A stretch of 64,000 nt of DNA from Macrostomum lignano (GCA_002269645.1 NIVC01002866.1:1-64000), one strand, 5' to 3'. Counted from the first letter of the stretch, positions 22,281 through 49,431 are shown. Made by a program: numbers and translations. Notes: generated from the letters alone by a model not told the origin.

Positions 22281-22757
22281 GGCCGGGGCTGTTGCCCCCA
22301 GGACCCCGGGTCCTGCACGCAATGGCGTGGTGAACTATCTGTGCAGTATGAGACTGGTATGGCCCTTATCCCAGCCAGCGATGCTCACACCTGCCTCCCC
22401 TGGCGGGCTGATAGCTAAAGAGACTCTGTCTCCTGATTTTCACCTTGCAAGGCGCACTTCGAAGGGTACTCGTCCCGTGGGTGTTAAGGCAGGCTCTCGG
22501 GCCTTGCCGAGCTGATTCGTTGGCGCCGGGTCCTGGTGTGACCATATAAACGCACCCTCTAATGTCCCAGTGTAACTCCGTGCTGATGGACGCTTGGCCA
22601 GGGAGTAGTCTGGTCGCTAACGGTTCCCCTTGCGCTTTTGGGTCCCCCCGCAGGGTGGTATTTTGCTTTTTGGAGGCCTGCCGCTTGGTTTGGGGTTGCG
22701 GCCTTGCGGCTCTTTGCCTGTGTTCTGCAGGAAGTCCCACCTTTTTACTTCCAGCCA

Positions 22758-24224: not shown

Positions 24225-24276
24225 GCGCCGAGGAGGAGGAGGAACTCCTGGCGACTGCAACACCCGATCTGCACTG

Positions 24277-27200: not shown

Positions 27201-27977
27201 TCAGAGCGAGGTGCTTGCATTAGCTCCTGCGCGGCAGAACTGCGCCGAAGGCAGCTTAGCGGTCGGAAGCTTATTTTTCACTCTGACAGCCAAGCAGCCC
27301 TTCGGGCCCTCTGCCGCAGCACCGCCAGCTCCAGGTCCGTCCTGGACTGCAACACCCAGCTCAACGGGCTTGCGCTAGGCAACCAAGTGGAGCTCAGATG
27401 GATCCCGGGCCATGCCGGTTTCCTCGGCAACGAGCGCGCCGACATGCTGGCTAAGGCTGGCTCCGCCGGCGCGCTGCTGGGGCTGGGCCCGGGAGCCCCC
27501 ATCCCCGCCTCGGTGATCAATTCCCGCGTTAAGCGCTGGGCTGACTCCGAGCATCTCCGCAGGTGGCACGACACCCGGAATTGTAGGCAATCCCGTGTTG
27601 CCGTCCCCTGCCCCTCTCCTCTCCTGCGTAGAGCCCTCCTCAGGCTCAACCGCAGAGACCTCAGAGCAGTCAGCATGGCCCTCTCCAGGCATGGCTGCTT
27701 CTCTCGCCACCGCTTCCTTCAGGGCCAAGTACCCGAGGAGCGGTGCCCCTTCTGCCGCTCAGGCAGTGAAAACGCCGAGCATTTTATCTGCCACTGCCCG
27801 GTTTTCACCAGGGCCAGGCTTACTCACCTCGGGCCAAACCCGGTTCTCTCCGACGTTTGCAGGCCCGAGAGCATCCCGCTGCTCGCCCGGTACCTCAGGG
27901 ACACCGGACGAGCTGATTTCTTCCCCACCGTCGGTGAGGAGGACCGCGCTGCAGGCGAGACCGACGGGTCCCCCTGA
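24277..27977 (+). CDS. LINE ORF2: AP endonuclease, reverse transcriptase, RNase H, CCHC; one frameshift near 27225
   Basis: QINTQH, VQEPW, GDVNAHH, SDHRFI (APE); KAPGPDG, FRPISL, PQGGVLTP, YADD (RT); YTDGS, FQSE, SDSQAAL, WIPGH, GNERADMLA (RNase H); CPFC...HFICHC. Confidence 0.93.
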
Positions 27978-29531
27978 GCGACACCACTTCAACGGAAGTC
28001 GTTGGTCGCCAGGGGCTAGCGGAATGGGCGGTCTCCTCCGCCTCGACCTCGCTGCATCCGCCGGACGCCCCCTGCAGCTAAGTCAAGTAAGTCAAGTACT
28101 AAAAGAACTTAGGCTTAGGCACATTAGATAAAAACTTTAGTGGAATGGGATTGATAAAAAGATGAACTATATTATATCAGCTGGTACCCTTAGCTTCCAA
28201 GACTCAGAAAAGCCAAAGCCGACGGAAAACCGGCCGACACTTGCTTGAAATTTTATCTGATAAAGCCATAATAACGAAACTATATATGGCTGTGCGAGAA
28301 ACATAGTAAACTGTTGCATTATCGCGCTTCGCTAGTCAACCGATCACCTATTTCAGTACTAGCCTAATTTAACGGAACTAAACTTGGCTACTACGCTGAC
28401 TCTCTAGCCCTACAACAGGTCGGTCCGGTTATTTACACGTTAAACAAAAATCACTTGTGCTTCGTGACAGAAGCAAATGCTTTATGTTGATAATTTCTGT
28501 AGAAAAAAAAATTTTTTTTTAAAAGTACAAGTGTAGCATTGTTTAAAAATATCATCAAAGCGTTTGTGATAATTGTTTAGATCTCTTATTTAAATAGCTG
28601 GTTCTTAGCTGTTTCTTAGAACTTTTTGCTGGGCTTGGACCAAATCGCTTGATGCTTTATTCTTATTGCAAAACCTTAATGTTCAAAAGGTAGTAAACTA
28701 CAATTCAATAATTTCAGCAACTTGTCATCTGATCTTAATTCCTTAAATCATGTGACATTCTCCTGTCCATAATTAATTGTATTGATTACTATTATTATCG
28801 GCTCAAGGCCAACAAAAGCAAATAAATTTGTATTTCTATAATATAGATTTTTTTGGTATTTCTGCAATTGAACCAAGTTTTATAAATTTCTAGGAGCTAA
28901 TTTTGTGAAATTTAAAGTTTTTTCCATTTTGACAAATGGAAAAAACTTTTTTTTCTAATTTTTTTCTAAATTTAAAATTTCCATGCAATTTTGTTACATT
29001 GATCCTTAGTGAAACTATCTACTAGATACTTTTCTTGGCACTGATTAGCTAGACAAGAACCCAACTTAAAAACTTTTTAGCAATTAATAAATGCTTAATA
29101 TACTTGATATATATTAACTATGTTATCATGCATTCCAGTAACATAATTTCTAGAGAAGCCAACTAATATATTTTTATTTAGTTAAATCTAGCCTTAATTA
29201 CCAATATTTTAAATATCATAAAATAATCATTGCCATTTAGCATTCTAGGTTTAAATTGGAAATACCTAAGTAAAACAAAATTTATCATGATATATTGTGA
29301 TACAAAAACAAAGCTATTAAAAACAGTTATAGTATAAGACTTTATTATAAAAAATTTAGAATGTCATTTTTTGTTAATTTTGTTTGAACTATAAGTCACT
29401 AATTTATATTTAGATTCATATAGTTTATTAAATTAAAGTCTTTTTTTAACACTAATCTAAACTCTAACTATTGCAGGTTTCACTAGTCTATAGAATATTT
29501 AGCAAAAAGTCAATCAGCCATATCTCAATAA

Positions 29532-32500
29532 ATGGCTGGGCAATTGGGTAGCAACAATGGAGGTCAAGCAGAGGCCAGCTACAGACCACTTACAGGCATG
29601 GTGTTCATCTTTAATCTTATCGTAGGAACTGGCGCTCTCACTCTGCCAAAGGCATTTGCCATTGCTGGCTGGCTAGCTGGCGGCCTCACTATTGTCTGCC
29701 TGGCATTCCTCAGCTTCATCACAGTGAGTTACATTGTAGAGGTCATGTCAACCACCAATGCGCTGGTCAAGCGCCAAGATGAGCAGCGACTGACTGACAC
29801 TGACAGCTTGAATAGCGAAAGTTCTCCACTAATCCGCTCGTCAGCTGACAGCTTCGGCAATGAAATCGATGAGCTTCGCTATCCAGGCAGGATTGTGCAG
29901 TCAGAAGCGCCTACTGCACCATCCGCCGATTCGATGCCATTTGAAATCACTCGACGATTTGAACTGGGCCAGATGGCGCACATGTACTTTAATTCCTACC
30001 TGATTGTGGCATTCTATGCCGTGATCTGCATTTACCTGTACGGCGATCTTGCTATCTATGCTGTTGCGGTGCCCAAGTCACTCAGAGACGTGGCTTGCAC
30101 TTATTGGCCAAATGCCAGCAGCACCGACACTGACAATCGGACAGAAACGGATTACTGCTGGTCACCCCAGTCTGGCTTAACCCGCCGAGACGCCTACAGA
30201 CTGTTTGTTGGCGCCTTCAGCCTGCTGGTTTGTCCGTTTGCCTTCTTCAATGTGCAGAAGACCAAGTATCTGCAAGTGGCCACCAGCCTGTCTCGCTGGT
30301 TGGCCTTCGGTGTCATGCTGACTTTGGCAGCCACCACTTTAGCCATCGGCCAGGGTAGCGGCCATCCAGGTCAGTTCTGAATTGGCTTCGCATGCTATTC
30401 CTGCTGGTTTATAACTGTGAGATATCCTGTAGCGATACCCAAATGTCTGGTCTAGAATCTATATGTCGTGGTGTCTATCTAGATTATTCTGATATCTAGA
30501 TACCCTAACAACTAGATACCTTTATGTATGCATACCCTAGTGCACAGATATCTTAGGGTATAGAAATCCGAATGCGTTGATATCCTGTTATCCAGATATT
30601 CTCTAGTACAGCTACCCTGTTTTATAGATATTATTTAGTATAGACACCCTGTTATCTAGATATTCTCTAGTATAGACACCCTGTTATCTAGATATTCTCT
30701 AGTATAGACACCCTGTTATCTAGATATTCTCTAGTATAGACACCCTGTTATCTAGATATTCTCTAGCATAGACAGACTGTTATCTAGATATTATCTAGTA
30801 TAGACAGACTGTTATCTAGATATTATCTAGTATAGACACCCTGTTATCTAGATATTCTCTAGCATAGACAGACTGTTATCTAGATATTTTCTAGTATAGG
30901 CACCCTGTTATCTAGATATTATCTAGTGTAGACACCCTGCCATCTAGATATTATCTAGTATAGACACCCTGTTATCTAGATATTCTCAATTCTCTAATAT
31001 AGACACTGTTACCTAGATATTATCTTGTATAGGCACCCTTTTATCTAGATATTCTCTAGTATAGACACCCTGTTATCTAGATATTCTCTAGTATAGACAC
31101 CCTGTTATCTAGATATTCTCTAGTAATGACACCCTGTTATCTAGATATTCTCTAGTATAGACACCCTGCCATCTAGATATTCTCTAGTATAGACACCCTG
31201 TTATCTAGATATTATCTTGTATAGGCACCCTTTTATCTAGATATTCTCTAGTATAGACACCCTGTTATCTAGATATTCTCTAGTAATGACACCCTGTTAT
31301 CTAGATATTCTCTAGTATAGACACCCTGCCATCTAGATATTCTCTAGTATAGACACCCTGTTATCTAGATATTATCTTGTATAGGCACCCTTTTATCTAG
31401 ATATTCTCTAGTATAGACACCCTGTTATCTAGATATTCTCTAGTAATGACACCCTGTTATCTAGATATTCTCTAGTAATGACACCCTGTTATCTAGATAT
31501 TCTCTAGTAATGACACCCTGTTATCTAGATATTCTCTAGTAATGACACCCTGTTATCTAGATATTCTCTAGTATAGACACCCTGCCATCTAGATATTATC
31601 TAGTATAGACACCCTGTTATCTAGATATTCTCTAGTATAGGAACACTGTTATCTAGACATATCTAGTATAGACACACTGTTATCTAGATATTATCTAGTA
31701 ATGACACCCTGTTATCTAGATATTCTCTAGTAATGACACCCTGTAATCTAGATATTCTCTAGTAATGACACCCTGTTATCTAGATATTCTCTAGTAATGA
31801 CACCCTGTTATCTAGATATTCTCTAGTATAGGCACACTGTTATCTAGACATATCTAGTATAGACACACTGTTATCTAGATATTATCTAGTAATGACACCC
31901 TGTTATCTAGATATTCTCTAGTAATGACACCCTGTTATCTAGATATTCTCTAGTAATGACACCCTGTTATCTAGATATTCTCTAGTAATGACACCCTGTT
32001 ATCTAGATATTCTCTAGTAATGACACCCTGTTATCTAGATATTCTCTAGTAATGACACCCTGTTATCTAGATATTCTCTAGTAATGACACCCTGTTATCT
32101 AGATATTCTCTAGTATAAGCATCCTGTTACCTATACTTACCTATACCTATACCTATCCTGCTAAATTGTTATTTGTTGTAATTTCAACCGCCAAATATGG
32201 TTGCTAATTTGTTATCCGCATCAGCTTGTAGCACGTACTACTGCCTGTGTATAAACCATTGGCTAACTTGAACCTCTGACATTTAAAAATAATGAACTAT
32301 TTTTGGCAACACCGTTGACCAGTGCAACCTCGCAACCGCCAATAACTGATTCAGGCCCAGTTAATTGGACAAGAATTCCCCAGCTGTTCGGCGCATCCGT
32401 GTACTCTTTCATGTGCCACCACTCGCTGCCTGCCCTGCTCACTCCCATGTCGCCTAAACGCCATCTGCGTCTGGTACTGCTGGCCGACTTCTCGCTAATA

Positions 32501-36129: not shown

Positions 36130-36460
36130 TGCCTTGACATCTCAGCAATTCCCCCCCCCCAAGCCTTGACATCTCAGCAATTCCCCCCAAGCCTTGACAT
36201 CTCAGCAATTCCCCCCCCCAAGCCTTGACATCTCAGCAATTCCTCCCAAGCCTTGACATCTCAGCAATTCCCCCCAAGCCTTGACATCTCAGCAATTCCC
36301 CCCCCCAAGCCTTGACATCTCAGCAATTCCTCCCAAGCCTTGACATCTCAGCAATTCCCCCCAAGCCTTGACATCTCAGCAATTCCTCCCAAGCCTTGAC
36401 ATCTCAGCAATTTCCCCAAGCCTTGACATCTCGGCAATTCCCCCCAGTAAGCTTGGACAT
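36130..36460. repeat. 28-31-bp minisatellite (aagccttgacatctcagcaattcccccc)
   Basis: Tandem copies with a variable C run. Confidence 0.9.

Positions 36461-37477: not shown

Positions 37478-37483
<6 letters not shown>

Positions 37484-37530
<47 letters not shown>
37484..37530. repeat. (CT)n microsatellite
   Basis: Direct observation. Another lies at 52164-52237. Confidence 0.95.
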
Positions 37531-37535
<5 letters not shown>

Positions 37536-37747: not shown

Positions 37748-37754
37748 TATAAAA
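37748..37754 (+). promoter_or_regulatory. TATA box of the poly-vWA gene
   Basis: TATAAAA about 110 nt upstream of the ATG at 37860. Confidence 0.55.
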
Positions 37755-37859: not shown

Positions 37860-40800
37860 ATGCGTCATCTACTGAAGTTTCTGGCGCTTGCCCTGGTCAT
37901 CCTGGCGGTGAGCGAAGGGCGAAGCATGCCGCGTAAGTTTTCCGGGTGACGTTTGCTCCGCCGCGGGGTTTGCTGTTCCCATTGTGCATGTGCAAAGGCC
38001 GCTAGAAATGTCATGTCACCTTAAATGGGGGCATCACAAACCCGAAATATCACAAACCCGAAATATCATAGACCCGAAATATCACAAACCCGAAATATCA
38101 TAAACCCGAAATATCATAAACCCGCAATATCATAAACCCGAAATATCATAAACCCGCAATATCATAAACCCGAAATATCATTACCCGCAATATCATTAAC
38201 CGGAAATATCGCAAACCCGAAATATCACAAACACGAAATATCATAAACCCGCGCAATATCATTAACCGGAAATATCACAAACGCGAAATATCAAAACTCT
38301 GAAAAATAAAATAGCAACGCCCATCATAAACCGCTTTTTTGGAAAGCGCTTTTCGGAGTCGTGACTTTTAGGGTTTGTGATGGCGACCCACCTTAAATAA
38401 AGGGGTCGGCAAACTCCGGTCCGCGAAGCCTCTCTATCCGGCCCTCGGGTCCTTTGAAATTTCACAATACCAATCTGCCCGCTCAAGGTTTGTGTCTCTT
38501 CTCAGCTCTCTGCTCTTTTCTCCCCTTTCCTCTTCTCTCCCTTGAGGTAAAGAAGTTTTCTGACCCCTGCAAATCAATACTCCTATTACGTCATTTAGAA
38601 AACCTACGTGTAGAATTATTTAGAGAGCGGAGACTTGGACGCTGACTGCGAGGCTGACGCGTCTTTTTTCCATGACTACGCTTAATGTGGCTTCCAAGCA
38701 TCTTACTCTAAACTGCTGTAAGACACCGTAGATACAGCATAGGCGTATACAGGAGCGGACGGCTAGCTTTATTGGCCGTGCTACGGACCAAGAAGCGGGG
38801 TTATGCAGATTAGGGAGGGACTTTGCGAGTTGACACTCACATTTGATCCCGTTCAGCTCGCAGGTTGCATTTCGTTTGTTGGTTAAGTTTCAGCTACAAA
38901 TACTCGTACTGAAAAAATTATTGCGCTTGAAATTCACAGGATGCCCCGGTGGAGGCAGGCCAGTTGCCACCAGCAAGAGGGTCTGCTCCTGCAAGCCGGT
39001 AGCTCCCCGACCTGGAAAGCGAGGATCGCTGATATTCGTTGTCGATGACACCGGCAGCATGGGCCGCGTCATCACAGCCGTCAGGAACCACATTCAAAGC
39101 ATCATCAGGGCGAATAAGCGCTTCAACAACTACGTCATCGCTACTTACGGAGATCCATACAGGCGGAACGTGCTCAAGACAAGGAACGCCCACCAGGCAC
39201 TCGCGTTCCTGAGACGCGTCCGTCCTCACGGCGGTGGCGACTGTCCTGAGATGGCTCTGCAAGGAGTTCGCGATGCCGCTGCTGCCGCCGACCGAAACTC
39301 GGTCCTGTTCCTGTTCACCGACGCCTCCGCCAAGGACGCCCACTTGCAGAGCTCTGTCGCCAGCCTGCTGTCTTCCAAGAACATCCGCTTCTTCACTGTT
39401 GCTTCTGGAAATCTGTGCGGCCGTCCGGGCAATGTGTACAAATCTCTCGCCACGAGGACTCGAGGTCGGTTTTCTAAGTTGGGCAACGCATATACCAAAT
39501 CCGTAAGTTTTGATCTATAACTTACAGTAACCCGTAAATTTAGTGCATCATTAACTCTTAAGCTGGGAAAGATTTTTTTTGAGTATTATGTGTACTGTCA
39601 TGGCTACATTGTATTATTTTGGATAAAAATTTGCAGGTAATGCACTTCATTCGCAAGGCTGTTTCGGGACACTACAGCTTTAGCGTCTTTCCTCGAAATG
39701 CTGGAGAACTACGCCGAGTAATGTCTGGTCGTGAGTAAAAGAATTGAAAGTATTTTTTTCTTTCTCTTAATTTCGAACGATTACACAAGCTACGTTTTAT
39801 AGCTTAAAAGCAAGCATGACTCTTCATTTATTGAATTTTTCAATCCATTTAGGCTGCGGATGCCGCGTGGTTCGTCACTACAAGTGCAGAGGTGGTGGCG
39901 GAAAGAAACCAAAACCGCCAAGAAGTAAGATCCCTCTGCGATAGATATTAAAATTTGTATAATGCAAATCTACATGTTTTCGCCAAATTAAATGCTACTT
40001 TAGGATGCCGAAGAGGCGAAAGGGTCAGCTTCCGAAGGCGAAAGGTCTGCTCATGCAAGCCTGTTGCTCCCCGACCTGGAAAGCGAGGATCGCTGATCTT
40101 CGTTGTCGATGACACCGGCAGCATGGGCCGCGTCATCACAGCCGTCAGGAACCACATTCAAAGCATCATCAGGGCGAACAAGCGCTTCAATAACTACGTT
40201 CTTGGTACGTACGGAGATCCCTACAGGCGGAACGTGCTCAAGACAAGGAACGCCCACCAGGCACTCGCGTTCCTGAGACGCGTCCGTCCTCACGGTGGTG
40301 GCGACTGTCCTGAGATGTCTATGCAAGGAGTTCGCGATGCCGCTGCTGCCGCCGACCGAAACTCGGTCCTGTTCCTGTTCACCGACGCCTCCGCCAAGGA
40401 CGCCCACTTGCAGAGCTCTGTCGCCAGCCTGCTGTCTTCCAAGAACATCCGCTTCTTCACTGTTGCTTCTGGAAATCTGTGCGGCCGTCCGGGCAATGTG
40501 TACAAATCTCTCGCCACGAGGACTCGAGGTCGCTTCTCCAAACTCGGAATGAAATTGGCGTCAAAAGTACGTACTGTATAATTATCGATATTGCCGATTG
40601 ATTTTCGTTATTTGTTAGTGGCCATGCGTTGACTATTGCTTCTTTACAATCCAGGTGATGTCGTTCATCAAGGGCCGGTTGCTGACGCTTCAGCTTCGGA
40701 GTTCTGCTCGCAACGCCAGAGAGCTGTCTCGAGTGATGTCTGGCCGTGAGTAGATTTTTCCTGGTACTGAAACCTTTCTNNNNNNNNNNNNNNNNNNNNN

Positions 40801-43800
40801 NNNNNNNNNNNNNNNNNNNNNNNNNNNNNNNNNNNNNNNNNNNNNNNNNNNNNNNNNNNNNNNNNNNNNNNNNNNNNNNNNNNNNNNNNNNNNNNNNNNN
40901 NNNNNNNNNNNNNNNNNNNNNNNNNNNNNNNNNNNNNNNNNNNNNNNNNNNNNNNNNNNNNNNNNNNNNNNNNNNNNNNNNNNNNNNNNNNNNNNNNNNN
41001 NNNNNNNNNNNNNNNNNNNNNNNNNNNNTTGGCAGTTTATAGTTTGTGCCATGCCTGTCAATGTCGGCAGTCAAATGCTCCGTTGTCAAGTTAGGCAGTC
41101 AAATATTGTCTATCCAACATAACCATAAACATTTAAAACTGCGTTGTAGGATGCGGTTGCCGATTCGTCAAAATTCGCATTGCATTCCATCCGGTGGACC
41201 GCCTGTCCGCCACCTGTCCGACCGCCTGTCCGAACCACAGTCCGTCCAAACCTAAGCGCTGCCCTCGAGGTGGTCGCAGGATCTCCATCAAGAAGAAGGT
41301 CTGCTCATGCAAGCCGTAGCTCCCCGACCTGGAAAGCGAGGATCGCTGATCTTCGTTGTCGATGACACCGGCAGCATGGGCCGCGTCATCACAGCCGTCA
41401 GGAACCACATTCAAAGCATCATCAGGGCGAACAAGCGCTTCAATAACTACGTTCTTGGTACGTACGGAGATCCCTACAGGCGGAACGTGCTCAAGACAAG
41501 GAACGCCCACCAGGCACTCGCGTTCCTGAGACGCGTCCGTCCTCACGGGGTGGCGACTGTCCTGAGATGGCTCTGCAAGGAGTTCGCGATGCCGCTGCTG
41601 CCGCCGACCGAACTCGTCCTGTTCCTGTTCACCGATGCTCCGCCAAGGACGCCCACTTGCAGAGCTCTGTCGCCAGCCTGCTGTCTTCCAAGAACATCCG
41701 CTTCTTCACTGTTGCTTCTGGAAATCTGTGCGCCGACCGGGAAATGTGTACAAATCTCTCGCCACGAGGACTCGAGGTCGCTTCTCCAAACTCGGAATGA
41801 AATTGGCGTCAAAAGTACGTACTGTATAATTATCGATATTGCCGATTGATTTTCGTTATTTGTTAGTGGCCATGCGTTGACTATTGCTTCTTTACAATCC
41901 AGGTGATGTCATTCATCAGGGGCGCGGTTGCTGGACGCTTCAGCTTCGGAGTTCTGCCTCGCAACGCCAGAGAGCTGTCTCGAGTGATGTCTGGCCGTAA
42001 GTGATCATCGATCATCTCTCTTTTCAAGATTTCCAGGATATTTTGCTTGGCTGCCCGAATTGTGTTAGCTGGTCGTGTATCTGTTGGCAATTTTTAAGAT
42101 AATTCGGCCTCAACCCTACTGGTAAAGCAGTATCGTAGCTTAACCCCTCAATGTTCCCATTAAAGCTCAAAAGATAAATGTATATACATGTAGCATAGTG
42201 TAGCTATTTCTATTATTTAGTAACTCTTCGGGGTACACTTGTCAGCCTAGCGTCTACCCATCCCTAAAACGAGTTTTCTTGACCCGAGATTTAAGGAAAG
42301 CTTAAGCCATCTAGTTCCATCTTAGACTTTTTTCTCTTCAGGATGCGGATGCCGCTTTGTCCGTACTCACAAGTGCGTTGGAACCGGAGGGGTTCGGCCT
42401 CCCGTCCGCCCACCTGTCCGACCCTGTCCGACCACCAGTCCGTCCAAACCTAAGCGCTGCCCTCGAGGTGGCCGCAGGATCTCCACCAAGAAGAAGGTCT
42501 GCTCATGCAAGCCTGTTGCTCCCCGACCTGGAAAGCGAGGATCGCTGATCTTCGTTGTCGATGACACCGGCAGCATGGGCCGCGTCATCAAAGCCGTCAG
42601 GAACCACATTCAAGGCATCATCAGGGCTAACAAGCGCTTCAATAACTACGTTCTTGGTACGTACGGAGATCCCTACAAGCGTAACGTGCTCAAGACAAGG
42701 AACGCCCACCAGGCACTCGCGTTCCTGAGACGCGTCCGTCCTCACGGGGGGCGACTGTCCTGAGATGTCTATGCATGGAGTTCGCGATGCCGCTGCTGCC
42801 GCCGACCGAAACTCGGTCCTGTTCCTGTTCACCGACGCCTCCGCCAAGGACTCGCGCATGCACAAATCTGTGGCCAAATTGCTGGCTTCCAAGAACATCC
42901 GCTTCTTCATCATCGCCTCCGGAAATCTGTGCGGACATAGTGGCGGCGCGTACAAAGCCATCGCCCGGAAGACTCGAGGTCGCTTCTCCAAACTCGGAAT
43001 GAAATTGGCGTCAAAAGTACGTACTGTATAATTATCGATATTGCCGATTGATTTTCGTTATTTGTTAGTGGCCATGCGTTGACTATTGCTTCTTTACAAT
43101 CCAGGTGATGTCGTTCATCAAGGGCGCGGTTGCTGGACGCTTCAGCTTCGGAGTTCTGCCTCGCAACGCCAGAGAGCTGTCTCGAGTGATGTCTGGCCGT
43201 AAGTGATCATCGATCATCTCTCTTTTCAAGATTTCCAGGATATTTTGCTTGGCTGCCCGAATTGTGTTAGCTGGTCGTGTATCTGTTGGCAATTTTTAAG
43301 ATAATTCGGCCTCAACCCTACTGGTAAAGCAGTATCGTAGCTTAACCCCTCAATGTTCCCATTAAAGCTCAAAAGATAAATGTATATACATGTAGCATAG
43401 TGTAGCTATTTCTATTATTTAGTAACTCTTCGGGGTACACTTGTCAGCCTAGCGTCTACCCATCCCTAAAACGAGTTTTCTTGACCCGAGATTTAAGGAA
43501 AGCTTAAGCCATCTAGTTCCATCTTAGACTTTTTTCTCTTCAGGATGCGGATGCCGCTTTGTCCGTACTCACAAGTGCGTTGGAACCGGAGGGGTTCGGC
43601 CTCCCGTCCGCCCACCTGTCCGACCGCTGTCCGACCACCAGTCCGTCCCAAACCTAAGCGCTGCCCTCGAGGTGGCCGCAGGATCTCCACCAAGAAGAAG
43701 GTCTGCTCATGCAAGCCTGTTGCTCCCCGACCTGGAAAGCGAGGATCGCTGATCTTCGTTGTCGATGACACCGGCAGCATGGGCCGCGTCATCAAAGCCG

Positions 43801-46800
43801 TCAGGAACCACATTCAAAGCATCATCAGGGCGAACAAGCGCTTCAATAACTACGTTCTTGGTACGTACGGAGATCCCTACAACGGAACGTGCTCAAGACA
43901 AGGAACGCCCACCAGGCACTCGCGTTCCTGAGACGCGTCCGTCCTCACGGGGTGGCGACTGTCCTGAGATGTCTATGCATGGAGTTCGCGATGCCGCTGC
44001 TGCCGCCGACCGAAACTCGGTCCTGTTCCTGTTCACCGACGCCTCCGCCAAGGACTCGCGCATGCACAAATCTGTGGCCAAATTGCTGGCTTCCAAGAAC
44101 ATCCGCTTCTTCATCATCGCCTCCGGAAATCTGTGCGGACATAGTGGCGGCGCGTACAAAGCCATCGCCCGGAAGACTCGAGGTCGCTTCTCCAAACTCG
44201 GAATGAAATTGGCGTCAAAAGTACGTACTGTATAATTATCGATATTGCCGATTGATTTTCGTTATTTGTTAGTGGCCATGCGTTGACTATTGCTTCTTTA
44301 CAATCCAGGTGATGTCGTTCATCAAGGGCGCGGTTGCTGGACGCTTCAGCTTCGGAGTTCTGCCTCGCAACGCCAGAGAGCTGTCTCGAGTGATGTCTGG
44401 CCGTAAGTGATCATCGATCATCTCTCTTTTCAAGATTTCCAGGATATTTTGCTTGGCTGCCCGAATTGTGTTAGCTGGTCGTGTATCTGTTGGCAATTTT
44501 TAAGATAATTCGGCCTCAACCCTACTGGTAAAGCAGTATCGTAGCTTAACCCCTCAATGTTCCCATTAAAGCTCAAAAGATAAATGTATATACATGTAGC
44601 ATAGTGTAGCTATTTCTATTATTTAGTAACTCTTCGGGTACACTTGTCAGCCTAGCGTCTACCCATCCCTAAAACGAGTTTTCTTGACCCGAGATTTAAG
44701 GAAAGCTTAAGCCATCTAGTTCCATCTTAGACTTTTTTCTCTTCAGGATGCGGATGCCGCTTTGTCCGTACTCACAAGTGCGTTGGAACCGGAGGGGTTC
44801 GGCCTCCCGTCCGCCCACCTGTCCGACCGCCTGTCCGACCACCAGTCCGTCCCAAACCTAAGCGCTGCCCTCGAGGTGGCCGCAGGATCTCCACCAAGAA
44901 GAAGGTCTGCTCATGCAAGCCTGTTGCTCCCCGACCTGGAAAGCGAGGATCGCTGATCTTCGTTGTCGATGACACCGGCAGCATGGGCCGCGTCATCAAA
45001 GCCGTCAGGAACCACATTCAAAGCATCATCAGGGCGAACAAGCGCTTCAATAACTACGTTCTTGGTACGTACGGAGATCCCTACAAACGGAACGTGCTCA
45101 AGACAAGGAACGCCCACCAGGCACTCGCGTTCCTGAGACGCGTCCGTCCTCACGGGGTGGCGACTGTCCTGAGATGTCTATGCATGGAGTTCGCGATGCC
45201 GCTGCTGCCGCCGACCGAAACTCGGTCCTGTTCCTGTTCACCGACGCCTCCGCCAAGGACTCGCGCATGCACAAATCTGTGGCCAAATTGCTGGCTTCCA
45301 AGAACATCCGCTTCTTCATCATCGCCTCCGGAAATCTGTGCGGACATAGTGGCGGCGCGTACAAAGCCATCGCCCGGAAGACTCGAGGTCGCTTCTCCAA
45401 ACTCGGAATGAAATTGGCGTCAAAAGTACGTACTGTATAATTATCGATATTGCCGATTGATTTTCGTTATTTGTTAGTGGCCATGCGTTGACTATTGCTT
45501 CTTTACAATCCAGGTGATGTCGTTCATCAAGGGCGCGGTTGCTGGACGCTTCAGCTTCGGAGTTCTGCCTCGCAACGCCAGAGAGCTGTCTCGAGTATGT
45601 CTGGCCGTAAGTGATCATCGATCATCTCTCTTTTCAAGATTTCCAGGATATTTTGCTTGGCTGCCCGAATTGTGTTAGCTGGTCGTGTATCTGTTGGCAA
45701 TTTTTAAGATAATTCGGCCTCAACCCTACTGGTAAAGCAGTATCGTAGCTTAACCCCTCAATGTTCCCATTAAAGCCCAAACGATAAATGTATATACATG
45801 TAGCATAGTGTAGCTATTTCTATTATTTAGTAACTCTTCGGGGTACACTTGTCAGCCTAGCGTCTACCCATCCCTAAAACGAGTTTTCTTGACCCGAGAT
45901 TTTAAGGAAAGCTTGAGCCATCTAGTTCCATCTTAGACTTTTTTCTCTTCAGGATGCGGATGCCGCTTTGTCCGTACTCACAAGTGCGTTGGAACCGGAG
46001 GGGTTCGGCCTCCCGTCCGCCCACCTGTCCGACCGCCTGTCCGACCACCAGTCCGTCCCAAACCTAAGCGCTGCCCTCGAGGTGGCCGCAGGATCTCCAC
46101 CAAGAAGAAGGTCTGCTCATGCAAGCCTGTTGCTCCCGACCTGGAAAGCGAGGATCGCTGATCTTCGTTGTCGATGACACCGGCAGCATGGGCCGCGTCA
46201 TCAAAGCCGTCAGGAACCACATTCAAAGCATCATCAGGGCGAACAAGCGCTTCAATAACTACGTTCTTGGTACGTACGGAGATCCCTACAACGGAACGTG
46301 CTCAAGACAAGGAACGCCCACCAGGCACTCGCGTTCCTGAGACGCGTCCGTCCTCACGGGGGTGGCGACTGTCCTGAGATGTCTATGCATGGAGTTCGCG
46401 ATGCCGCTGCTGCCGCCGACCGAAACTCGGTCCTGTTCCTGTTCACCGACGCCTCCGCCAAGGACTCGCGCATGCACAAATCTGTGGCCAAATTGCTGGC
46501 TTCCAAGAACATCCGCTTCTTCATCATCGCCTCCGGAAATCTGTGCGGACATAGTGGCGGCGCGTACAAAGCCATCGCCCGGAAGACTCGAGGTCGCTTC
46601 TCCAAACTCGGAATGAAATTGGCGTCAAAAGTACGTACTGTATAATTATCGATATTGCCGATTGATTTTCGTTATTTGTTAGTGGCCATGCGTTGACTAT
46701 TGCTTCTTTACAATCCAGGTGATGTCATTCATCAGGGGCGGTTGCTGGACGCTTCAGCTTCGGAGTTCTGCCTCGCAACGCCAGAGAGCTGTCTCGAGTG

Positions 46801-48658
46801 ATGTCTGGCCGTAAGTGATCATCGATCATCTCTCTTTTCAAGATTTCCAGGATATTTTGCTTGGCTGCCCGAATTGTGTTAGCTGGTCGTGTATCTGTTG
46901 GCAATTTTTAAGATAATTCGGCCTCAACCCTACTGGTAAAGCAGTATCGTAGCTTAACCCCTCAATGTTCCCATTAAAGCCCAAACGATAAATGTATATA
47001 CATGTAGCATAGTGTAGCTATTTCTATTATTTAGTAACTCTTCGGGGTACACTTGTCAGCCTAGCGTCTACCCATCCCTAAAACGAGTTTTCTTGACCCG
47101 AGATTTAAGGAAAGCTTAAGCCATCTAGTTCCATCTTAGACTTTTTTCTCTTCAGGATGCGGATGCCGCTTTGTCCGTACTCACAAGTGCGTTGGAACCG
47201 GAGGGGTTCGGCCTCCCGTCCGCCCACCTGTCCGACCGCCTGTCCGACCACCAGTCCGTCCCAAACCTAAGCGCTGCCCTCGAGGTGGCCGCAGGATCTC
47301 CACCAAGAAGAAGGTCTGCTCATGCAAGCCTGTTGCTCCCCGACCTGGAAAGCGAGGATCGCTGATCTTCGTTGTCGATGACACCGGCAGCATGGGCCGC
47401 GTCATCAAAGCCGTCAGGAACCACATTCAAAGCATCATCAGGGCGAACAAGCGCTTCAATAACTACGTTCTTGGTACGTACGGAGATCCCTACAAACGGA
47501 ACGTGCTCAAGACAAGGAACGCCCACCAGGCACTCGCGTTCCTGAGACGCGTCCGTCCTCACGGGGGTGGCGACTGTCCTGAGATGTCTATGCATGGAGT
47601 TCGCGATGCCGCTGCTGCCGCCGACCGAAACTCGGTCCTGTTCCTGTTCACCGACGCCTCCGCCAAGGACTCGCGCATGCACAAATCTGTGGCCAAATTG
47701 CTGGCTTCCAAGAACATCCGCTTCTTCATCATCGCCTCCGGAAATCTGTGCGGACATAGTGGCGGCGCGTACAAAGCCATCGCCCGGAAGACTCGAGGTC
47801 GCTTCTCCAAACTCGGAATGAAATTGGCGTCAAAAGTACGTACTGTATAATTATCGATATTGCCGATTGATTTTCGTTATTTGTTAGTGGCCATGCGTTG
47901 ACTATTGCTTCTTTACAATCCAGGTGATGTCATTCATCAGGGGCGCGGTTGCTGGACGCTTCAGCTTCGGAGTTCTGCCTCGCAACGCCAGAGAGCTGTC
48001 TCGAGTAATGTCTGGCCGTAAGTCACGCTAATTGGAATCTTTGTGTCTTCCTGCAGAGCTACATGTAGTATGGTTATACATTTTACTTGTAATAGCTTTA
48101 TAAGTTTCCATTCTAGCACTATGAATAGTGAATAGTCTTGGCTAACCAATTGTAGGCTGCGGCTGCCGATTCGTTCGCACCTACTCGTGCGTTGGCACGG
48201 GACTTGTTCGCCCTCATGGTGGCAGCTCGAGCTCTGGCACCGATGAGACAACCACGGATTCTAGCACCAGCACACACACCAGCACCAGCACAAGCACCAG
48301 CTCAGAGACCAGTGGTGACTCTGACCATGGCCACTGGGAGACAACGTCACACATTGAGCACTACTGCATTGATCCCTACACTAGCCACAAGTACAAGCCC
48401 GGACAGTCCTGGGTGAGCAAGGCCGACAGCATGTGCTTCCACTTTAAGTGCAGCAAGGACCCGAGCTCCAGCCGACCCTACCGCTCCGACTGCCTGAGTA
48501 CCAATGGCAAATGCGTGAGGGCGTCCAGCTCCGGCACCGATTTCAGCTGTAAGGTGCACGGATCGGTGAAGAAGTGCCAGTGCAAGAAGGAGGCTGACGG
48601 TAGCGTGTACATCACTCGCATGGAGACCTATACCAGCACGACTGAGTACGAGGACTAG
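37860..48658 (+). CDS. Secreted cationic protein with at least 8 tandem hemicentin/VWA7-type vWA domains and a Ser/Thr-rich plus Cys-rich C-terminus
   Basis: Exon 1 (37860-37932) MRHLLKFLALALVILAVSEG. vWA exons start at 38940, 40004, 41150, 42342, 43544, 44747, 45953 and 47156 (VVDDTGSM, GGGDCPEM, LFTDASAKD), each followed by a ~94-nt exon. Last exon 48156-48658. Units 1, 2 and 8 have intact vWA exons; others carry 1-nt indels. Confidence 0.85.
38027..38389. mobile_element. Mutator-like MITE (9-bp TSD accttaaat) carrying a 16-bp minisatellite
   Basis: TSD at 38018-38026 and 38390-38398. Imperfect TIR ggggg-catcacaaaccc / gggtttgtgatggcgaccc. Internal (cccgaaatatcacaaa)n. Confidence 0.75.
40780..41028. 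other. Assembly gap (N run) inside the vWA tandem array
   Basis: 249 N bases. Confidence 1.
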
Positions 48659-49431
48659 AAGAATTATTCGAATCGCATCGCAGCTCTGACTAACAGACAG
48701 AAAAGAAGCCTGTTTAGCTAACGGATTCTTGTTTTACAGACAGCTAGTACATGTAGTGAACATATTTATATTTAGCAAGTGGCACTACATGTTCAACTAA
48801 CGCATATTGACTAAATTAGACAACTATACTGTTCTGTTAACTCCTAATAGTAGCCCAAAGTACTCCTGTACGTTTAATATTAATAGTTTTGTTTTCTCCT
48901 TACCGCCAGTTTATCGTGTCGGTATATAGTTTCTCTGTCTGAGCAGACTAAGCTACTCGTGCATGCAGCTGTGATTTTTTGTTATAAAATTACTAATCTT
49001 ACTATCTATTCAAGATGCTTAATCACATTATTCCCAGCAACATCAAAACAATAAATTCCTCTTAATATAAAAACTATTATATTATATTATTATTTAAAAA
49101 ATAATGATTTTTCTTTTAAACCTTTTCATCTCACCTTGAATTCGAAGGCAAGCTGCCAATGTTTGGTCTGGCTCGGACAAGGACTCTTGGTTCAATTAAA
49201 TATAGAATTTTCAACGCAGTTTCTGTCTGTATAATAGCAGCTATAGTGGTGAAAATGTGTTTAATTTTACCGTTAAAAATATTTCACAATCAGCTTTGCC
49301 AGCTGGCCAGGGACAACTAAAACACTCGGGACGCGAAACGAGCCAAATCATGGTGAAAAAGGTTGGGGGTTCGTTTGAGTCTATGGGCGCCCAGTTTTTC
49401 ATGCATTAGATGCATTACGATCAGCTTAGCT

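What the first reader, a model, noticed from the sequence alone, without database searches (positions are those of the whole stretch)
37860..48658. Secreted, strongly cationic protein built from 8 or more tandem hemicentin-type vWA domains
Seen: a signal peptide, at least 8 repeats of a two-exon module (about 258 aa in the intact unit 8) with DDTGSM, GGGDCPEM and FTDASAKD, and very high Arg/Lys content. Known: hemicentins and VWA7 carry a single such vWA domain, followed in hemicentins by Ig repeats. Inference: a poly-vWA cationic protein is an unusual architecture and a candidate adhesive, mucus, rhabdite or seminal secretion that cross-links anionic surfaces.
Basis: partly seen in the sequence, partly recalled or inferred. 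Interest (0 to 1): 0.82.

Follow-up and report, generated by a model that had tools for sequence, protein, structure and literature searches.

The report
Secreted cationic eight-vWA flatworm protein gene
This is a real Macrostomum lignano (flatworm) gene for a secreted, very positively charged protein made of at least eight tandem hemicentin-type vWA domains; its peptides already sit unremarked in published tail and adhesive-footprint proteomes, and its function has never been studied.

Summary
Window 37860-48658 (+) is one 19-exon gene. It has a signal-peptide exon, eight two-exon modules (the last five on a 1204-bp period), and a unique C-terminal exon. Each module scores 120 bits on Pfam VWA_4 and folds as a complete vWA domain (pLDDT 95). 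The protein has 20% Arg+Lys, pI 11.5 and net charge about +336.

The N gap lies inside an intron. Every module is phase 1-1 and 774 nt long, so any number of hidden units would keep the frame.

About 24 deletions of 1-2 nt break the frame in units 2B-7, densest next to the gap. Filling them gives a 2198-codon ORF with no stop. A published transcript ORF of 1242 aa exceeds the longest open stretch as assembled (455 aa). I therefore read these deletions as assembly errors.

The organism is M. lignano. Fourteen tryptic peptides in the Wunderer 2019 datasets (tails, footprints, PNA pull-down) match exactly, including one from the C-terminal exon.

It is neither a hemicentin nor a VWA7. It belongs to a Macrostomum-restricted family of cationic multi-vWA_4 proteins. 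The likely role is a multivalent cross-linker in a secretion; that role is inferred, not shown.

The parts
37748..37754 (+). TATAAAA box about 110 nt upstream of the start codon (putative core promoter)
   Evidence: read directly from the sequence
37860..37932 (+). Exon 1: start codon and signal peptide MRHLLKFLALALVILAVSEG|RSMP. It ends in phase 1 with a GTAAGT donor.
   Evidence: The junction to unit 1 is predicted. Paralogues P0159, P0003 and P0012 also run from the signal peptide straight into a CPxG motif.
38033..38297 (.). 16-bp tandem repeat (16.6 copies) inside intron 1
38940..39502 (+). Unit 1 exon A (type I): N-terminal Cys triad plus vWA core. Intact.
   Evidence: 311/314 residues of P0001 are identical across units 1-2.
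39637..39730 (+). Unit 1 exon B: last helices of the vWA. Intact.
39853..39924 (+). Unit 2 mini-exon: linker CGCRVVRHYKCRGGGGKKPKPPR
   Evidence: The same junction is present in the independent gene model P0001.
40004..40566 (+). Unit 2 exon A (type I). Intact.
40655..40745 (+). Unit 2 exon B. It has three 1-nt deletions (about 40676, 40684, 40707), which leaves it in frame overall.
40780..41028 (.). Assembly gap (249 N), inside the intron 40746-41149 between unit 2 and unit 3
41150..41814 (+). Unit 3 exon A (type I vWA with a type II-like linker). About 10 small indels; this is the most damaged unit and it sits next to the gap.
41903..41996 (+). Unit 3 exon B. Intact.
42342..43016 (+). Unit 4 exon A (type II). 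Deletions at about 42423 (2 nt), 42444 and 42750 (2 nt).
43105..43198 (+). Unit 4 exon B. Intact.
43544..44220 (+). Unit 5 exon A. 1-nt deletions at about 43627, 43881 and 43949.
44309..44402 (+). Unit 5 exon B. Intact.
44747..45425 (+). Unit 6 exon A. 1-nt deletion in the GGGGG run at about 45154.
45514..45606 (+). Unit 6 exon B. 1-nt deletion at about 45597.
45953..46630 (+). Unit 7 exon A. 1-nt deletions at about 46135 (CCCC run) and 46290 (AAA run).
46719..46810 (+). Unit 7 exon B. 2-nt deletion at about 46738.
47156..47835 (+). Unit 8 exon A: intact reference unit. It encodes the linker RCGCRFVRTHKC-(VRPP)4-KPKRCPRGGRRISTKKKVCSC plus the vWA core.
47924..48017 (+). Unit 8 exon B. Intact.
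48156..48658 (+). C-terminal exon. It encodes the closing Cys triad, a Ser/Thr-rich acidic stretch (S+T 34%), an 8-Cys domain with no detectable homologue, and the TAG stop.
   Evidence: The published peptide EADGSVYITR maps at 48590.
49050..49055 (+). AATAAA, a candidate polyadenylation signal about 390 nt after the stop

Best explanation
One Macrostomum lignano gene encodes a secreted, polycationic protein of about 2200 aa.

Shown:
- A signal peptide is followed by at least eight modules. Each module is a complete hemicentin/VWA7-type vWA domain (Pfam VWA_4).
- Modules are separated by Pro/Arg/Lys spacers such as (VRPP)4.
- The protein ends in a Ser/Thr-rich stretch and an orphan 8-Cys domain.
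- The protein is made in the animal. Its peptides occur in tails and in material left on glass.
- The module array (1204-bp period, units 4-8 almost identical including their introns) arose by recent unit amplification or concerted evolution.

Inferred:
- Each vWA is flanked by two Cys triads, C-x13-C-x-C before it and C-x-C-x8-C after it. The model predicts these as beta hairpins. I infer that they clamp the domain termini.
- The small deletions that break the frame in units 2B-7 are consensus errors of the assembly in a near-identical tandem array. They are not real lesions.
- Mechanism: the protein is a multivalent extracellular cross-linker stored in and released from gland cells. Eight or more MIDAS-like sites (DxTGS ... 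GGGD ... TD) would bind acidic ligand side chains through a divalent cation. The cationic linkers (R+K 32%) would bind polyanions such as sulfated or acidic glycans and the glycocalyx. Together these would give cohesion to a mucus or adhesive secretion, much as the Lys/Arg-rich regions do in Mlig-ap1.
For: Gene structure:
- GT-AG introns and consistent phases across 19 exons.
- The independent model P0001 shares the unit 1 to unit 2 splice junctions.

Domain:
- VWA_4 scores E=9e-35 to 9e-36 per module.
- AlphaFold2 gives pLDDT 95.2 and pTM 0.91 with full vWA topology.
- Foldseek matches integrin beta-I/alpha-I, ANTXR and ITIH1 vWA domains.
- The extended unit models at pLDDT 90.4, with beta hairpins at both Cys triads.

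Charge.

Constraint between diverged units: dN/dS is 0.33-0.58.

Frameshifts read as errors:
- All are deletions, many in homopolymer runs.
- They recur at the same site in non-adjacent units (5 and 7).
- They are densest beside the gap.
- No stop appears after they are filled.
- A published transcript ORF is 1242 aa (RNA1310_3126.1). The longest open stretch as assembled is 455 aa.

Expression:
- 14 exact, fully tryptic peptides come from the Wunderer 2019 datasets.
- Four of them are specific to type II units or the C-terminal exon.
- In the Tails_Trypsin sheet the protein has 11 peptides and 32% coverage.

Family context:
- Paralogue P0012 fuses two such modules to a VWD domain and a 26% K+R, 8% Cys region.
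- P0010 carries an LCCL domain and P0019 is named a SUEL-lectin protein. All are secretion or matrix-type partners.
- Paralogue P0003 peptides are also in footprints.
Against: - As assembled, five of eight units are frameshifted. I had no reads to show that these are errors.
- Deletions are about 3.6-fold denser in exons than in introns of the array (13 in 3.9 kb against 2 in 2.2 kb). A uniform error model does not predict this, although the exons are richer in G+C and in homopolymers.
- The published transcript assemblies are collapsed (432-1242 aa), so unit number and order in the mRNA are unknown.
- The link from exon 1 to unit 1 is predicted only.
- Footprint and pull-down lists hold many intracellular proteins, so presence there is not specific.
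- No in situ, RNAi or binding data exist.
- The MIDAS Thr position falls in the GGGD loop, so metal binding is not certain.
Confidence: 0.6

Rival explanations
1. The array is partly decayed. The frameshifts in units 2B-7 are real, so this copy is a pseudogene, or it yields only short isoforms by skipping broken units. The published peptides and transcripts would then come from an intact paralogous or homeologous copy elsewhere in the duplicated M. lignano genome.
For: - About 24 frame-breaking deletions as assembled.
- One deletion, in the GGGGG run, is shared by four adjacent units (3-6), as expected if a mutation spread with unit duplication.
- Deletions are denser in exons than in introns.
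- P0001 and P0002 show that at least one near-identical second copy or allele exists.
- Whole-unit skipping would keep the frame, because each unit is 774 nt and phase 1-1.
Against: - There are no nonsense substitutions and almost no substitutions at all, in 2198 codons. All lesions are deletions.
- The same AAA-to-AA deletion occurs in units 5 and 7 but not in unit 6.
- Lesion density peaks at the contig end next to the gap.
- The type II and C-terminal peptides match this locus exactly.
Confidence: 0.12
2. It is a structural extracellular-matrix or basement-membrane protein that anchors cells to matrix, as the hemicentin vWA domain does. On this reading it is not a gland secretion.
For: - The vWA type is that of hemicentin and VWA7.
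- Multi-vWA matrix proteins such as collagen VI, matrilins and cochlin are common (established knowledge).
- Paralogue P0010 has the cochlin-like combination of LCCL plus vWA.
- The protein is abundant in whole-tail proteomes.
Against: - There are no Ig, EGF, TSP1, G2F, fibulin or collagen modules.
- It has an extreme pI of 11.5, recent unit amplification and a mucin-like Ser/Thr tail. These are typical of secreted glue or mucus proteins.
- Its peptides are recovered from footprints left on glass.
Confidence: 0.2
3. It is a reproductive secretion: seminal fluid from prostate glands, or cement or shell-gland material that attaches and hardens eggs.
For: - It is secreted, rapidly amplifying, lineage-restricted and present in tail samples. 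Tail samples include the genital region.
- The eggs of M. lignano are glued to the substrate (established knowledge).
Against: - No VWA, hemicentin or Willebrand term appears in the held supplements of the screen that found 76 prostate-limited transcripts.
- Footprints were collected from attaching worms, not from eggs. This is weak evidence, because the sample is not specific.
Confidence: 0.15
4. The number eight is an assembly artefact. The true array has a different number of units, either because near-identical 1.2-kb units were collapsed or expanded, or because units are hidden in the gap.
For: - Units 4-8 are almost identical, including 88-nt introns that are 100% identical in seven units.
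- The gap has only an estimated length, between units 2 and 3.
- Transcript assemblies range from 432 to 1242 aa.
Against: - Units 4, 7 and 8 carry private or shared substitutions that tell them apart.
- The spacing across the gap (1253 bp) is close to one period.
- This rival changes the count only. It does not change what the gene is.
Confidence: 0.35

Closest known systems
Macrostomum lignano paralogues: BOX15_Mlig025149g1 (P0003, 512 aa, 2 modules), A0A1I8I2M0 (P0009, 3 modules), BOX15_Mlig029053g1 (P0159, 1 module), BOX15_Mlig022224g1 / PAA86075.1 (P0012, 4112 aa)
   Same: - A signal peptide runs directly into the same module: Cys triad, VWA_4, Cys triad.
- vWA identity is 44-55%.
- Most are strongly cationic (pI 10.2-11.7).
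- Module junctions fall at the same place.
- P0003 peptides are also in the published footprint proteome.
   Different: - They have 1-3 modules instead of 8 or more.
- None has the Ser/Thr-rich plus 8-Cys C-terminal domain.
- P0012 continues into a VWD domain and a huge K/R/C-rich region.
- P0010 inserts an LCCL domain.
- P0009 is only mildly basic (pI 8.6).
- All are uncharacterised.
Hemicentin-1 / fibulin-6 and VWA7 (N-terminal vWA domain, Pfam PF25106)
   Same: - Same vWA subfamily: the DxTGSM, GGGDCPE and FTDASAKD motifs and the conserved Cys pair.
- 25-40% identity to animal hemicentin and VWA7-like proteins.
   Different: - Hemicentin and VWA7 carry one such domain, with 2 copies in a few predicted proteins. 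It is followed by a galactose-binding-like domain and Ig, TSP1, EGF or fibulin modules, or preceded by VWA7_N.
- None of these modules is present here.
- Those proteins are near-neutral or acidic (pI 5.8-6.4 for P0017 and P0018).
Mlig-ap1, the cohesive protein of the M. lignano temporary adhesive (Wunderer et al. 2019, PMC6410801)
   Same: - Same animal. It is secreted, very large, repetitive, Lys/Arg-rich and Cys-containing.
- It is proposed to act through its positive charge on negatively charged partners.
- It is found in the same footprint and tail proteomes.
   Different: - Mlig-ap1 has KR-repeat regions with pI above 14, plus C-type lectin, vWD-C8-TIL and 17 EGF domains. It has no vWA.
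- The protein here has folded vWA domains carrying the charge, and none of those domains.
- Adhesive-gland expression and an RNAi non-adhesion phenotype are shown for ap1. They are untested here.
Classical multi-vWA extracellular proteins (collagen VI, matrilins, cochlin/vitrin; Pfam PF00092)
   Same: - Tandem vWA domains in a secreted protein, used for multivalent protein-protein or protein-matrix binding.
- Foldseek matches the collagen VI alpha3 N5 and collagen VII vWFA2 domains.
   Different: - A different vWA subfamily. PF00092 scores only 24-30 bits here, against 120 bits for VWA_4.
- No collagenous, coiled-coil or LCCL part.
- The extreme positive charge is not a feature of those proteins.
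Bacterial-looking poly-vWA protein P0102 (1549 aa, Logan assembly, 6-7 VWA_4/VWA domains; source organism not identified)
   Same: The only hit in the top 150 of 1.84 billion representatives with more than three vWA_4-like domains in tandem.
   Different: - Distant from the query (E=1e-15, 33% identity).
- No Cys triads and not cationic in the same way.
- It comes from an unrelated lineage, so the tandem arrangement is probably convergent.

Membership tests
Pfam PF25106 VWA_4 (hemicentin/VWA7-type vWA domain) | Profile score above the curated gathering cut-off | tested here: met
   120.1 and 123.4 bits against a cut-off of 27, E=9e-35 and 9e-36. This is the best-scoring of the four vWA families that hit.
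Pfam PF25106 VWA_4 (hemicentin/VWA7-type vWA domain) | Complete alpha/beta (Rossmann-like) vWA fold | tested here: met
   AlphaFold2 gives pLDDT 95.2 and pTM 0.91, with six strands alternating with helices. Foldseek finds integrin I and beta-I, ANTXR and ITIH1 vWA domains at E about 1e-7 and TM about 0.65.
Pfam PF25106 VWA_4 (hemicentin/VWA7-type vWA domain) | Signature motifs DxTGSM, GGGDCPE, FTDAxAKD and the conserved Cys pair | tested here: met
   The motifs are present in all 8 units, some of them across frameshifts. The G-G-G-D-C-P-E, A-x-A-K-D and C132 columns are invariant or nearly so in alignments of 12 and 60 family members.
Pfam PF25106 VWA_4 (hemicentin/VWA7-type vWA domain) | Divalent-cation binding at a MIDAS site | not testable with these tools
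   In the alignment to alpha2delta-1, DvtGS falls on the MIDAS DVSGS and TD falls on TD, but the MIDAS Thr position falls in the GGGD loop. Metal binding is inferred only.
Hemicentin (fibulin-6) orthologue | vWA followed by a galactose-binding-like domain, long Ig arrays, TSP1/G2F, EGF and a fibulin C-terminal module | tested here: not met
   Only vWA families hit the modules. The 167-aa C-terminal part has no Pfam hit at E<=1. No further coding exons or domains were found in 36-50 kb on either strand.
VWA7 | VWA7_N domain (PF25107) before the vWA and an Ig_VWA7 domain after it | tested here: not met
   Neither domain was detected. They are detected in the hagfish and scallop relatives P0017 and P0018.
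Mlig-ap1-type cohesive adhesive protein | KR-repeat regions with pI above 14, plus a C-type lectin / vWD-C8-TIL / EGF core | tested here: not met
   Here R+K is 20% and pI is 11.5, carried by folded vWA domains and short linkers. No lectin, vWD, TIL or EGF domain is present. Definition taken from PMC6410801.
Mlig-ap1-type cohesive adhesive protein | Expression in adhesive gland cells and loss of attachment on RNAi | not testable with these tools
   Only proteomic presence in tails, footprints and a PNA pull-down is on record. Those lists are not specific.
Macrostomum cationic multi-vWA_4 family (defined here from the hits) | Signal peptide followed by one or more modules of Cys triad, VWA_4, Cys triad, joined by Pro/Lys/Arg spacers | tested here: met
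   The same layout and junctions are seen in P0003, P0009, P0012, P0014 and P0159. These are the only hits with E<=1e-30 among 1.84 billion representatives. All the named ones are M. lignano.
Classical multi-vWA matrix proteins (PF00092: collagen VI, matrilin, cochlin) | PF00092-type vWA domains combined with collagenous, coiled-coil or LCCL parts | tested here: not met
   PF00092 scores 24.3-29.9 bits, barely above its cut-off of 23.8 and far below VWA_4. No partner domains are present.

The most novel reading that the evidence does not exclude
The cationic poly-vWA family (this gene plus P0003-type paralogues) is an overlooked working component of the Macrostomum temporary adhesive or its mucus interface. 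Its many Mg2+/Ca2+-dependent MIDAS bonds and cationic linkers would tie Mlig-ap1/ap2 or the glycocalyx together.

This would help explain two published findings: worms cannot detach in 80-100% isoosmolar MgCl2, and heparin blocks attachment (PMC6410801). A small anionic releasing factor would then act by competing at these sites.
Probability: 0.12. Interest if true: 0.7.

Novelty: new variant of a known kind. Interest (0 to 1): 0.45.

Why it matters
[quoted passage not shown] The published mass-spectrometry tables also contain this abundant protein of pI 11.5 with eight vWA domains, and a paralogue of it. Neither is discussed in the paper.

If the protein is glandular and secreted, it adds a metal-dependent, multivalent binding module to the flatworm secretion toolkit. 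It also gives a small, well-folding unit of about 240 aa that could be expressed and tested for biomimetic glues.

The gene is also a clear example of a phase 1-1 two-exon module amplified in tandem with concerted evolution. And it shows how such arrays are damaged in assemblies, which explains why public gene models for it are only fragments (P0001, P0002).

Tried and rejected
- **Sequence search of PDB with one module:** no hit. A family profile gave only weak alpha2delta-1 vWA hits.
- **C-terminal domain:** it has no Pfam hit and no homologue by word search in 5.8 billion proteins. My impression that it looks VWC- or SVWC-like could not be supported and is dropped.
- **Other copies of the locus:** P0001 is not on record in the contig index. 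A guessed ORF from unit 8 to the stop was not accepted for look-up.
- **Gene and transcript IDs in paper full texts:** Mlig025149, Mlig022224, Mlig029053, RNA815_1151, RNA1310_3126 and others gave no hits. RNA815_1151 is not in the held supplements of Arbore 2015. Lengerer 2018 (tail in situ screen) and Smith 2017 (slug glue vWA) are not held.
- **Is P0012 the same as Mlig-ap1?** Rejected. The ap1 antibody peptide is absent, and its VWD domain lies at residues 733-891 rather than in a central core.
- **Minus-strand ORFs inside the units:** no Pfam hits. They are mirror ORFs of G+C-rich coding sequence.
- **Rfam on 36-50 kb:** nothing.
- **Tandem Repeats Finder:** it cannot see the 1204-bp period, because its maximum period is 500. 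The repeat finder and my own alignments were used instead.
- **Second Foldseek run on the extended unit:** it added nothing beyond vWA hits. A TRAP-like beta-ribbon resemblance is only suggestive, at TM 0.46.

Full report
**What is in the sequence**

The window is eukaryotic, with 47% G+C and one run of 249 N at 40780-40728+300, that is 40780-41028. Between 38.9 and 48.2 kb, the repeat finder reports eight copies of a unit. Start-to-start spacings are 1064, 1253, 1199, 1204, 1204, 1205 and 1204 bp.

A multiple alignment of the units shows two conserved coding blocks per unit, separated by an 88-nt intron. Both blocks are bounded by AG acceptors and GT donors. The exon table is:
- Exon A runs from a CAG|GATGC or TAG|GATGC acceptor to an AAAA|GTACGT donor.
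- Exon B runs from a CAG|GTGATG acceptor to a GGCC|GTAAGT donor.
- Exon A starts in phase 1, the A/B junction is phase 0, and exon B ends in phase 1.
- In the intact unit 8 the two exons are 680 and 94 nt.
- Unit 1 lacks the long linker. In unit 2 the linker is split off as a 72-nt mini-exon.

Upstream, an ATG at 37860 opens MRHLLKFLALALVILAVSEG|RSMP. This has a basic n-region, an 11-residue hydrophobic core and small residues at positions -3 and -1. The exon ends in phase 1 at a GTAAGT donor, and a TATAAAA box lies about 110 nt further upstream.

Downstream of unit 8, a TAG|GCTGCGG acceptor at 48156 opens a 503-nt exon that ends with TAG at 48658. An AATAAA follows at 49050.

The finding's coordinates, 37860-48658, are therefore exactly the start and stop codons of one 19-exon gene.

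**The gap**

The N run lies entirely within the intron between the unit-2 exon B donor (after 40745) and the unit-3 exon A acceptor (before 41150). Both flanks are unique intronic sequence. Its length therefore cannot disturb the reading frame. Because every unit is phase 1-1 and a multiple of three in length, any whole number of units hidden in the gap would also keep the frame. The spacing across the gap (1253 bp) is close to one period. What cannot be decided here is whether units are missing.

**The frameshifts**

As assembled, only unit 1, exon A of unit 2 and unit 8 read through. Aligning each exon to unit 8 locates about 24 events:
- three in unit 2 exon B;
- about ten in unit 3 exon A;
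- three each in units 4, 5 and 7;
- two in unit 6.

Outside unit 3, whose divergent linker makes the alignment less certain, every event is a deletion of 1-2 nt. Many fall in homopolymer runs (GGGGG, CCCC, AAA). The AAA-to-AA deletion is present in units 5 and 7 but not in unit 6. Density is highest right next to the gap, which is a contig end.

After the missing bases are filled with N, the 2198-codon reading frame contains no stop codon, and units 4-8 differ by only a handful of substitutions. The longest open stretch in the spliced sequence as assembled is 455 aa. A published M. lignano transcript of this gene has an ORF of 1242 aa.

I conclude that most or all of these lesions are consensus errors in a near-identical tandem array. 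This is an inference, because no reads were available. One observation does not fit a uniform error model. Deletions are about 3.6 times denser in the exons of units 4-8 (13 in 3.9 kb) than in the introns (2 in 2.2 kb). The exons are richer in G+C and in homopolymers, which may be the reason.

**What the module is**

- Each module hits Pfam VWA_4 (PF25106, the hemicentin/VWA7-type vWA) at 120-123 bits. VWA_2, VWA and VWA_3 score far lower.
- An AlphaFold2 model of the vWA part of unit 8 (exon A plus exon B, 191 aa, 60-sequence alignment) has mean pLDDT 95.2 and pTM 0.91, with the full strand-helix alternation of a vWA domain.
- Foldseek against the PDB returns integrin beta-I and alpha-I domains, anthrax-toxin-receptor vWA domains, ITIH1, and collagen VI and VII vWA domains.

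So the two exons together encode a complete domain.

A profile of the family aligns DvtGS with the MIDAS DVSGS of the calcium-channel alpha2delta-1 vWA, and TD with its TD. The MIDAS threonine position falls in the invariant GGGDCPE loop. A metal site is likely but not shown.

A second model covers the unit with its flanks (243 aa, pLDDT 90.4). It predicts beta hairpins for the segment CPRGGRRISTKKKVCSC before the vWA and for CGCRFVRTYSC after it. These two Cys triads recur around every vWA in the protein and in the paralogues. The structural unit is therefore Cys triad, vWA, Cys triad, and (VRPP)4 is the spacer between units. That the triads disulfide-clamp the adjacent N and C termini of the vWA is my inference.

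**Composition**

The repaired mature protein has R 12.8% and K 7.4% against D+E 4.6%. Net charge is about +336 and pI is 11.5.
- The 66-aa linker has 32% R+K, 21% Pro, 9% Cys and no acidic residue.
- The vWA domain itself is also basic (pI 11.5).
- The last 167 aa are different: S+T 34%, net charge 0 and eight Cys. This part has no Pfam hit and no homologue found by word search in 5.8 billion proteins.

Diverged units show dN/dS of 0.33-0.58. The units have therefore evolved as coding sequence.

**Organism and expression**

The best database hits are Macrostomum lignano proteins. P0001 (UniRef A0A1I8GPA0) matches units 1-2 at 311 of 314 residues, and it includes the unit 1 to mini-exon to unit 2 splice junctions that I derived.

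The decisive evidence comes from the supplementary mass-spectrometry tables of Wunderer et al. 2019 (PMC6410801). Fourteen tryptic peptides listed there match the conceptual protein exactly, each preceded by K or R. They include:
- VRPHGGGDCPEMSMHGVR, FNNYVLGTYGDPYKR and NSVLFLFTDASAKDSR, which are specific to type II units 4-8;
- DAHLQSSVASLLSSK and FFTVASGNLCGRPGNVYK, from type I units 1-3;
- EADGSVYITR, from the C-terminal exon.

The tables assign them to these transcripts, annotated only as 'Pfam VWA; similar to hemicentin':
- RNA815_1151.1 = RNA1310_3126.1 (ORF 1242 aa, pI 11.75);
- an RNA1509 transcript (2777 nt, 5'UTR-CDS-3'UTR, 925 aa);
- RNA1310_17919 (584 aa);
- RNA1310_27252.1 (432 aa).

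The 1242-aa entry carries both type I and type II peptides. The 584- and 925-aa entries carry type I peptides together with the C-terminal peptide, and the 584-aa entry also carries a type II peptide. Units of both types and the C-terminal exon are therefore joined in mRNA. The assemblies are clearly collapsed, however, and do not give the unit number.

The peptides occur in three sample types:
- amputated tails (11 peptides, 32% coverage in the sheet Tails_Trypsin);
- footprints left on glass (two sheets);
- one PNA-lectin pull-down.

Peptides of paralogue P0003 are in the footprints too. These lists also contain HSP60, HSP90, EF1-alpha, ATP synthase and ribosomal proteins. Presence there shows translation and is compatible with secretion, but it is not specific. 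The paper's text does not discuss these proteins.

**Relatives**

A full HMMER scan of 1.84 billion representatives with exon A of unit 8 gave 1067 hits, of which only ten had E<=1e-30. All the named ones are M. lignano:
- P0009 has 3 modules.
- P0010 is vWA-LCCL-vWA.
- P0011 and P0004 each have 2 modules.
- P0012 (PAA86075.1, 4112 aa) has a signal peptide, 2 modules, a VWD domain and a region with 26% K+R and 8% Cys.
- P0159 is a complete one-module protein.
- P0019, with one such vWA, is named a SUEL-lectin protein.

Outside Macrostomum, identities drop to 25-40% and almost all hits have one vWA_4 domain. Two copies occur in predicted proteins of hagfish, scallop, Ciona, a midge and a mudskipper. 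One bacterial-looking protein of unknown source has 6-7 copies.

The gene is therefore neither a hemicentin nor a VWA7. The galactose-binding-like, Ig, EGF, fibulin and VWA7_N parts are all absent. It is the largest known member of a Macrostomum-restricted family of cationic multi-vWA_4 secreted proteins.

**How it most likely works**

Shown:
- a signal peptide;
- eight or more complete vWA domains of a type with a conserved MIDAS-like motif;
- polycationic linkers and domains;
- a Ser/Thr-rich tail;
- translation in vivo.

Inferred: the protein is stored in gland cells and released as a multivalent cross-linker.
- Each vWA would offer a cation-dependent site for acidic ligand residues.
- The linkers would offer electrostatic binding to polyanionic glycans.
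- The tail is a plausible mucin-type O-glycosylation site, which could account for its recovery with PNA.

The closest functional analogy is Mlig-ap1. Its Lys/Arg-rich regions are proposed to provide cohesion and are blocked by heparin. The same paper reports that worms cannot detach in 80-100% isoosmolar MgCl2. A Mg2+-dependent vWA bond is a speculative alternative contributor to that effect.

Which gland makes the protein is unknown. No VWA or hemicentin term appears in the supplements of the prostate seminal-fluid screen. I could not reach the tail in situ screen of Lengerer 2018.

**Surroundings**

Nothing else is encoded in 36-50 kb. The minus-strand ORFs have no Pfam hits and there are no Rfam matches. 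The neighbours are:
- a LINE-type retrotransposon at 22.6-28 kb;
- an amino-acid transporter exon at 29.5 kb;
- eIF2D at 58.7-61.3 kb.

**Verdict**

The gene is a new variant of a known kind. It uses a known domain in an unusual, lineage-specific, polycationic tandem array. The protein is already present but unremarked in public transcriptomes and proteomes. Interest is moderate (0.45). It would be higher if the gene proves to be a working part of the flatworm adhesive.

Noticed in passing
window 22638-28131 (+): A G+C-rich (about 0.60) non-LTR (LINE-type) retrotransposon. It has an uninterrupted 1033-aa ORF with endonuclease/exonuclease/phosphatase and reverse-transcriptase domains, followed by an RNase H segment. 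A 528-aa upstream ORF has no Pfam hit (possibly ORF1). The element looks recently active.
   Followed up: partly
window 58707-61280 (+) and 29532-30380 (+): Flanking genes. Exons with Pre-PUA, PUA and eIF2D winged-helix domains point to an eIF2D/ligatin gene. An exon at 29.5 kb carries the N-terminus of an Aa_trans amino-acid transporter.
   Followed up: partly
window 36131-36446, 37483-37531, 38033-38297: Three simple tandem repeats lie around the 5' end of the gene. A 28-bp unit x11 lies 1.4 kb upstream, (CT)24 lies 330 bp upstream of the ATG, and a 16-bp unit x16.6 lies inside intron 1.
   Followed up: no
window 42342-48017 (units 4-8): Small deletions are about 3.6 times denser in exons (13 in 3.9 kb) than in the introns of the same units (2 in 2.2 kb). 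The 88-nt A/B introns are 100% identical in seven units. A uniform sequencing-error model does not explain this. G+C or homopolymer content is the likely cause but was not tested.
   Followed up: partly
P0012 = PAA86075.1 (BOX15_Mlig022224g1), M. lignano, not in the window: A 4112-aa paralogue with a signal peptide, two of the same vWA modules, a VWD domain, and more than 3000 aa with 26% K+R and 8% Cys. This make-up resembles Mlig-ap1 but is distinct from it. I found no paper that mentions it.
   Followed up: partly
P0010 (A0A1I8JEL7) and P0019/P0267 (A0A1I8GDF5, A0A1I8JAD7), M. lignano: The same vWA_4 module is combined with an LCCL domain (a cochlin-like layout), and it also occurs in proteins named SUEL-type lectin proteins. 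The module has been shuffled widely among secreted proteins of this species.
   Followed up: no
Supplementary datasets S1-S3 of PMC6410801: Peptides of paralogue P0003 (for example AIRPNGGGDcPEYSLSGVR, NYVLATFSDPYKR, NYINAIKPSGGGDcPEYSLSAIR) are also present in the footprint and PNA pull-down tables. At least two members of the family are therefore recovered from secreted material.
   Followed up: partly
L002 (Logan contig SRR28338165_1131634, 1073 nt): An intron-free contig from an unidentified sequencing run encodes a complete one-module homologue (P0014, 273 aa, 55% identical in the vWA). It has the same signal, Cys triad, vWA, Cys triad layout. It is probably a transcript from a related flatworm.
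   Followed up: no
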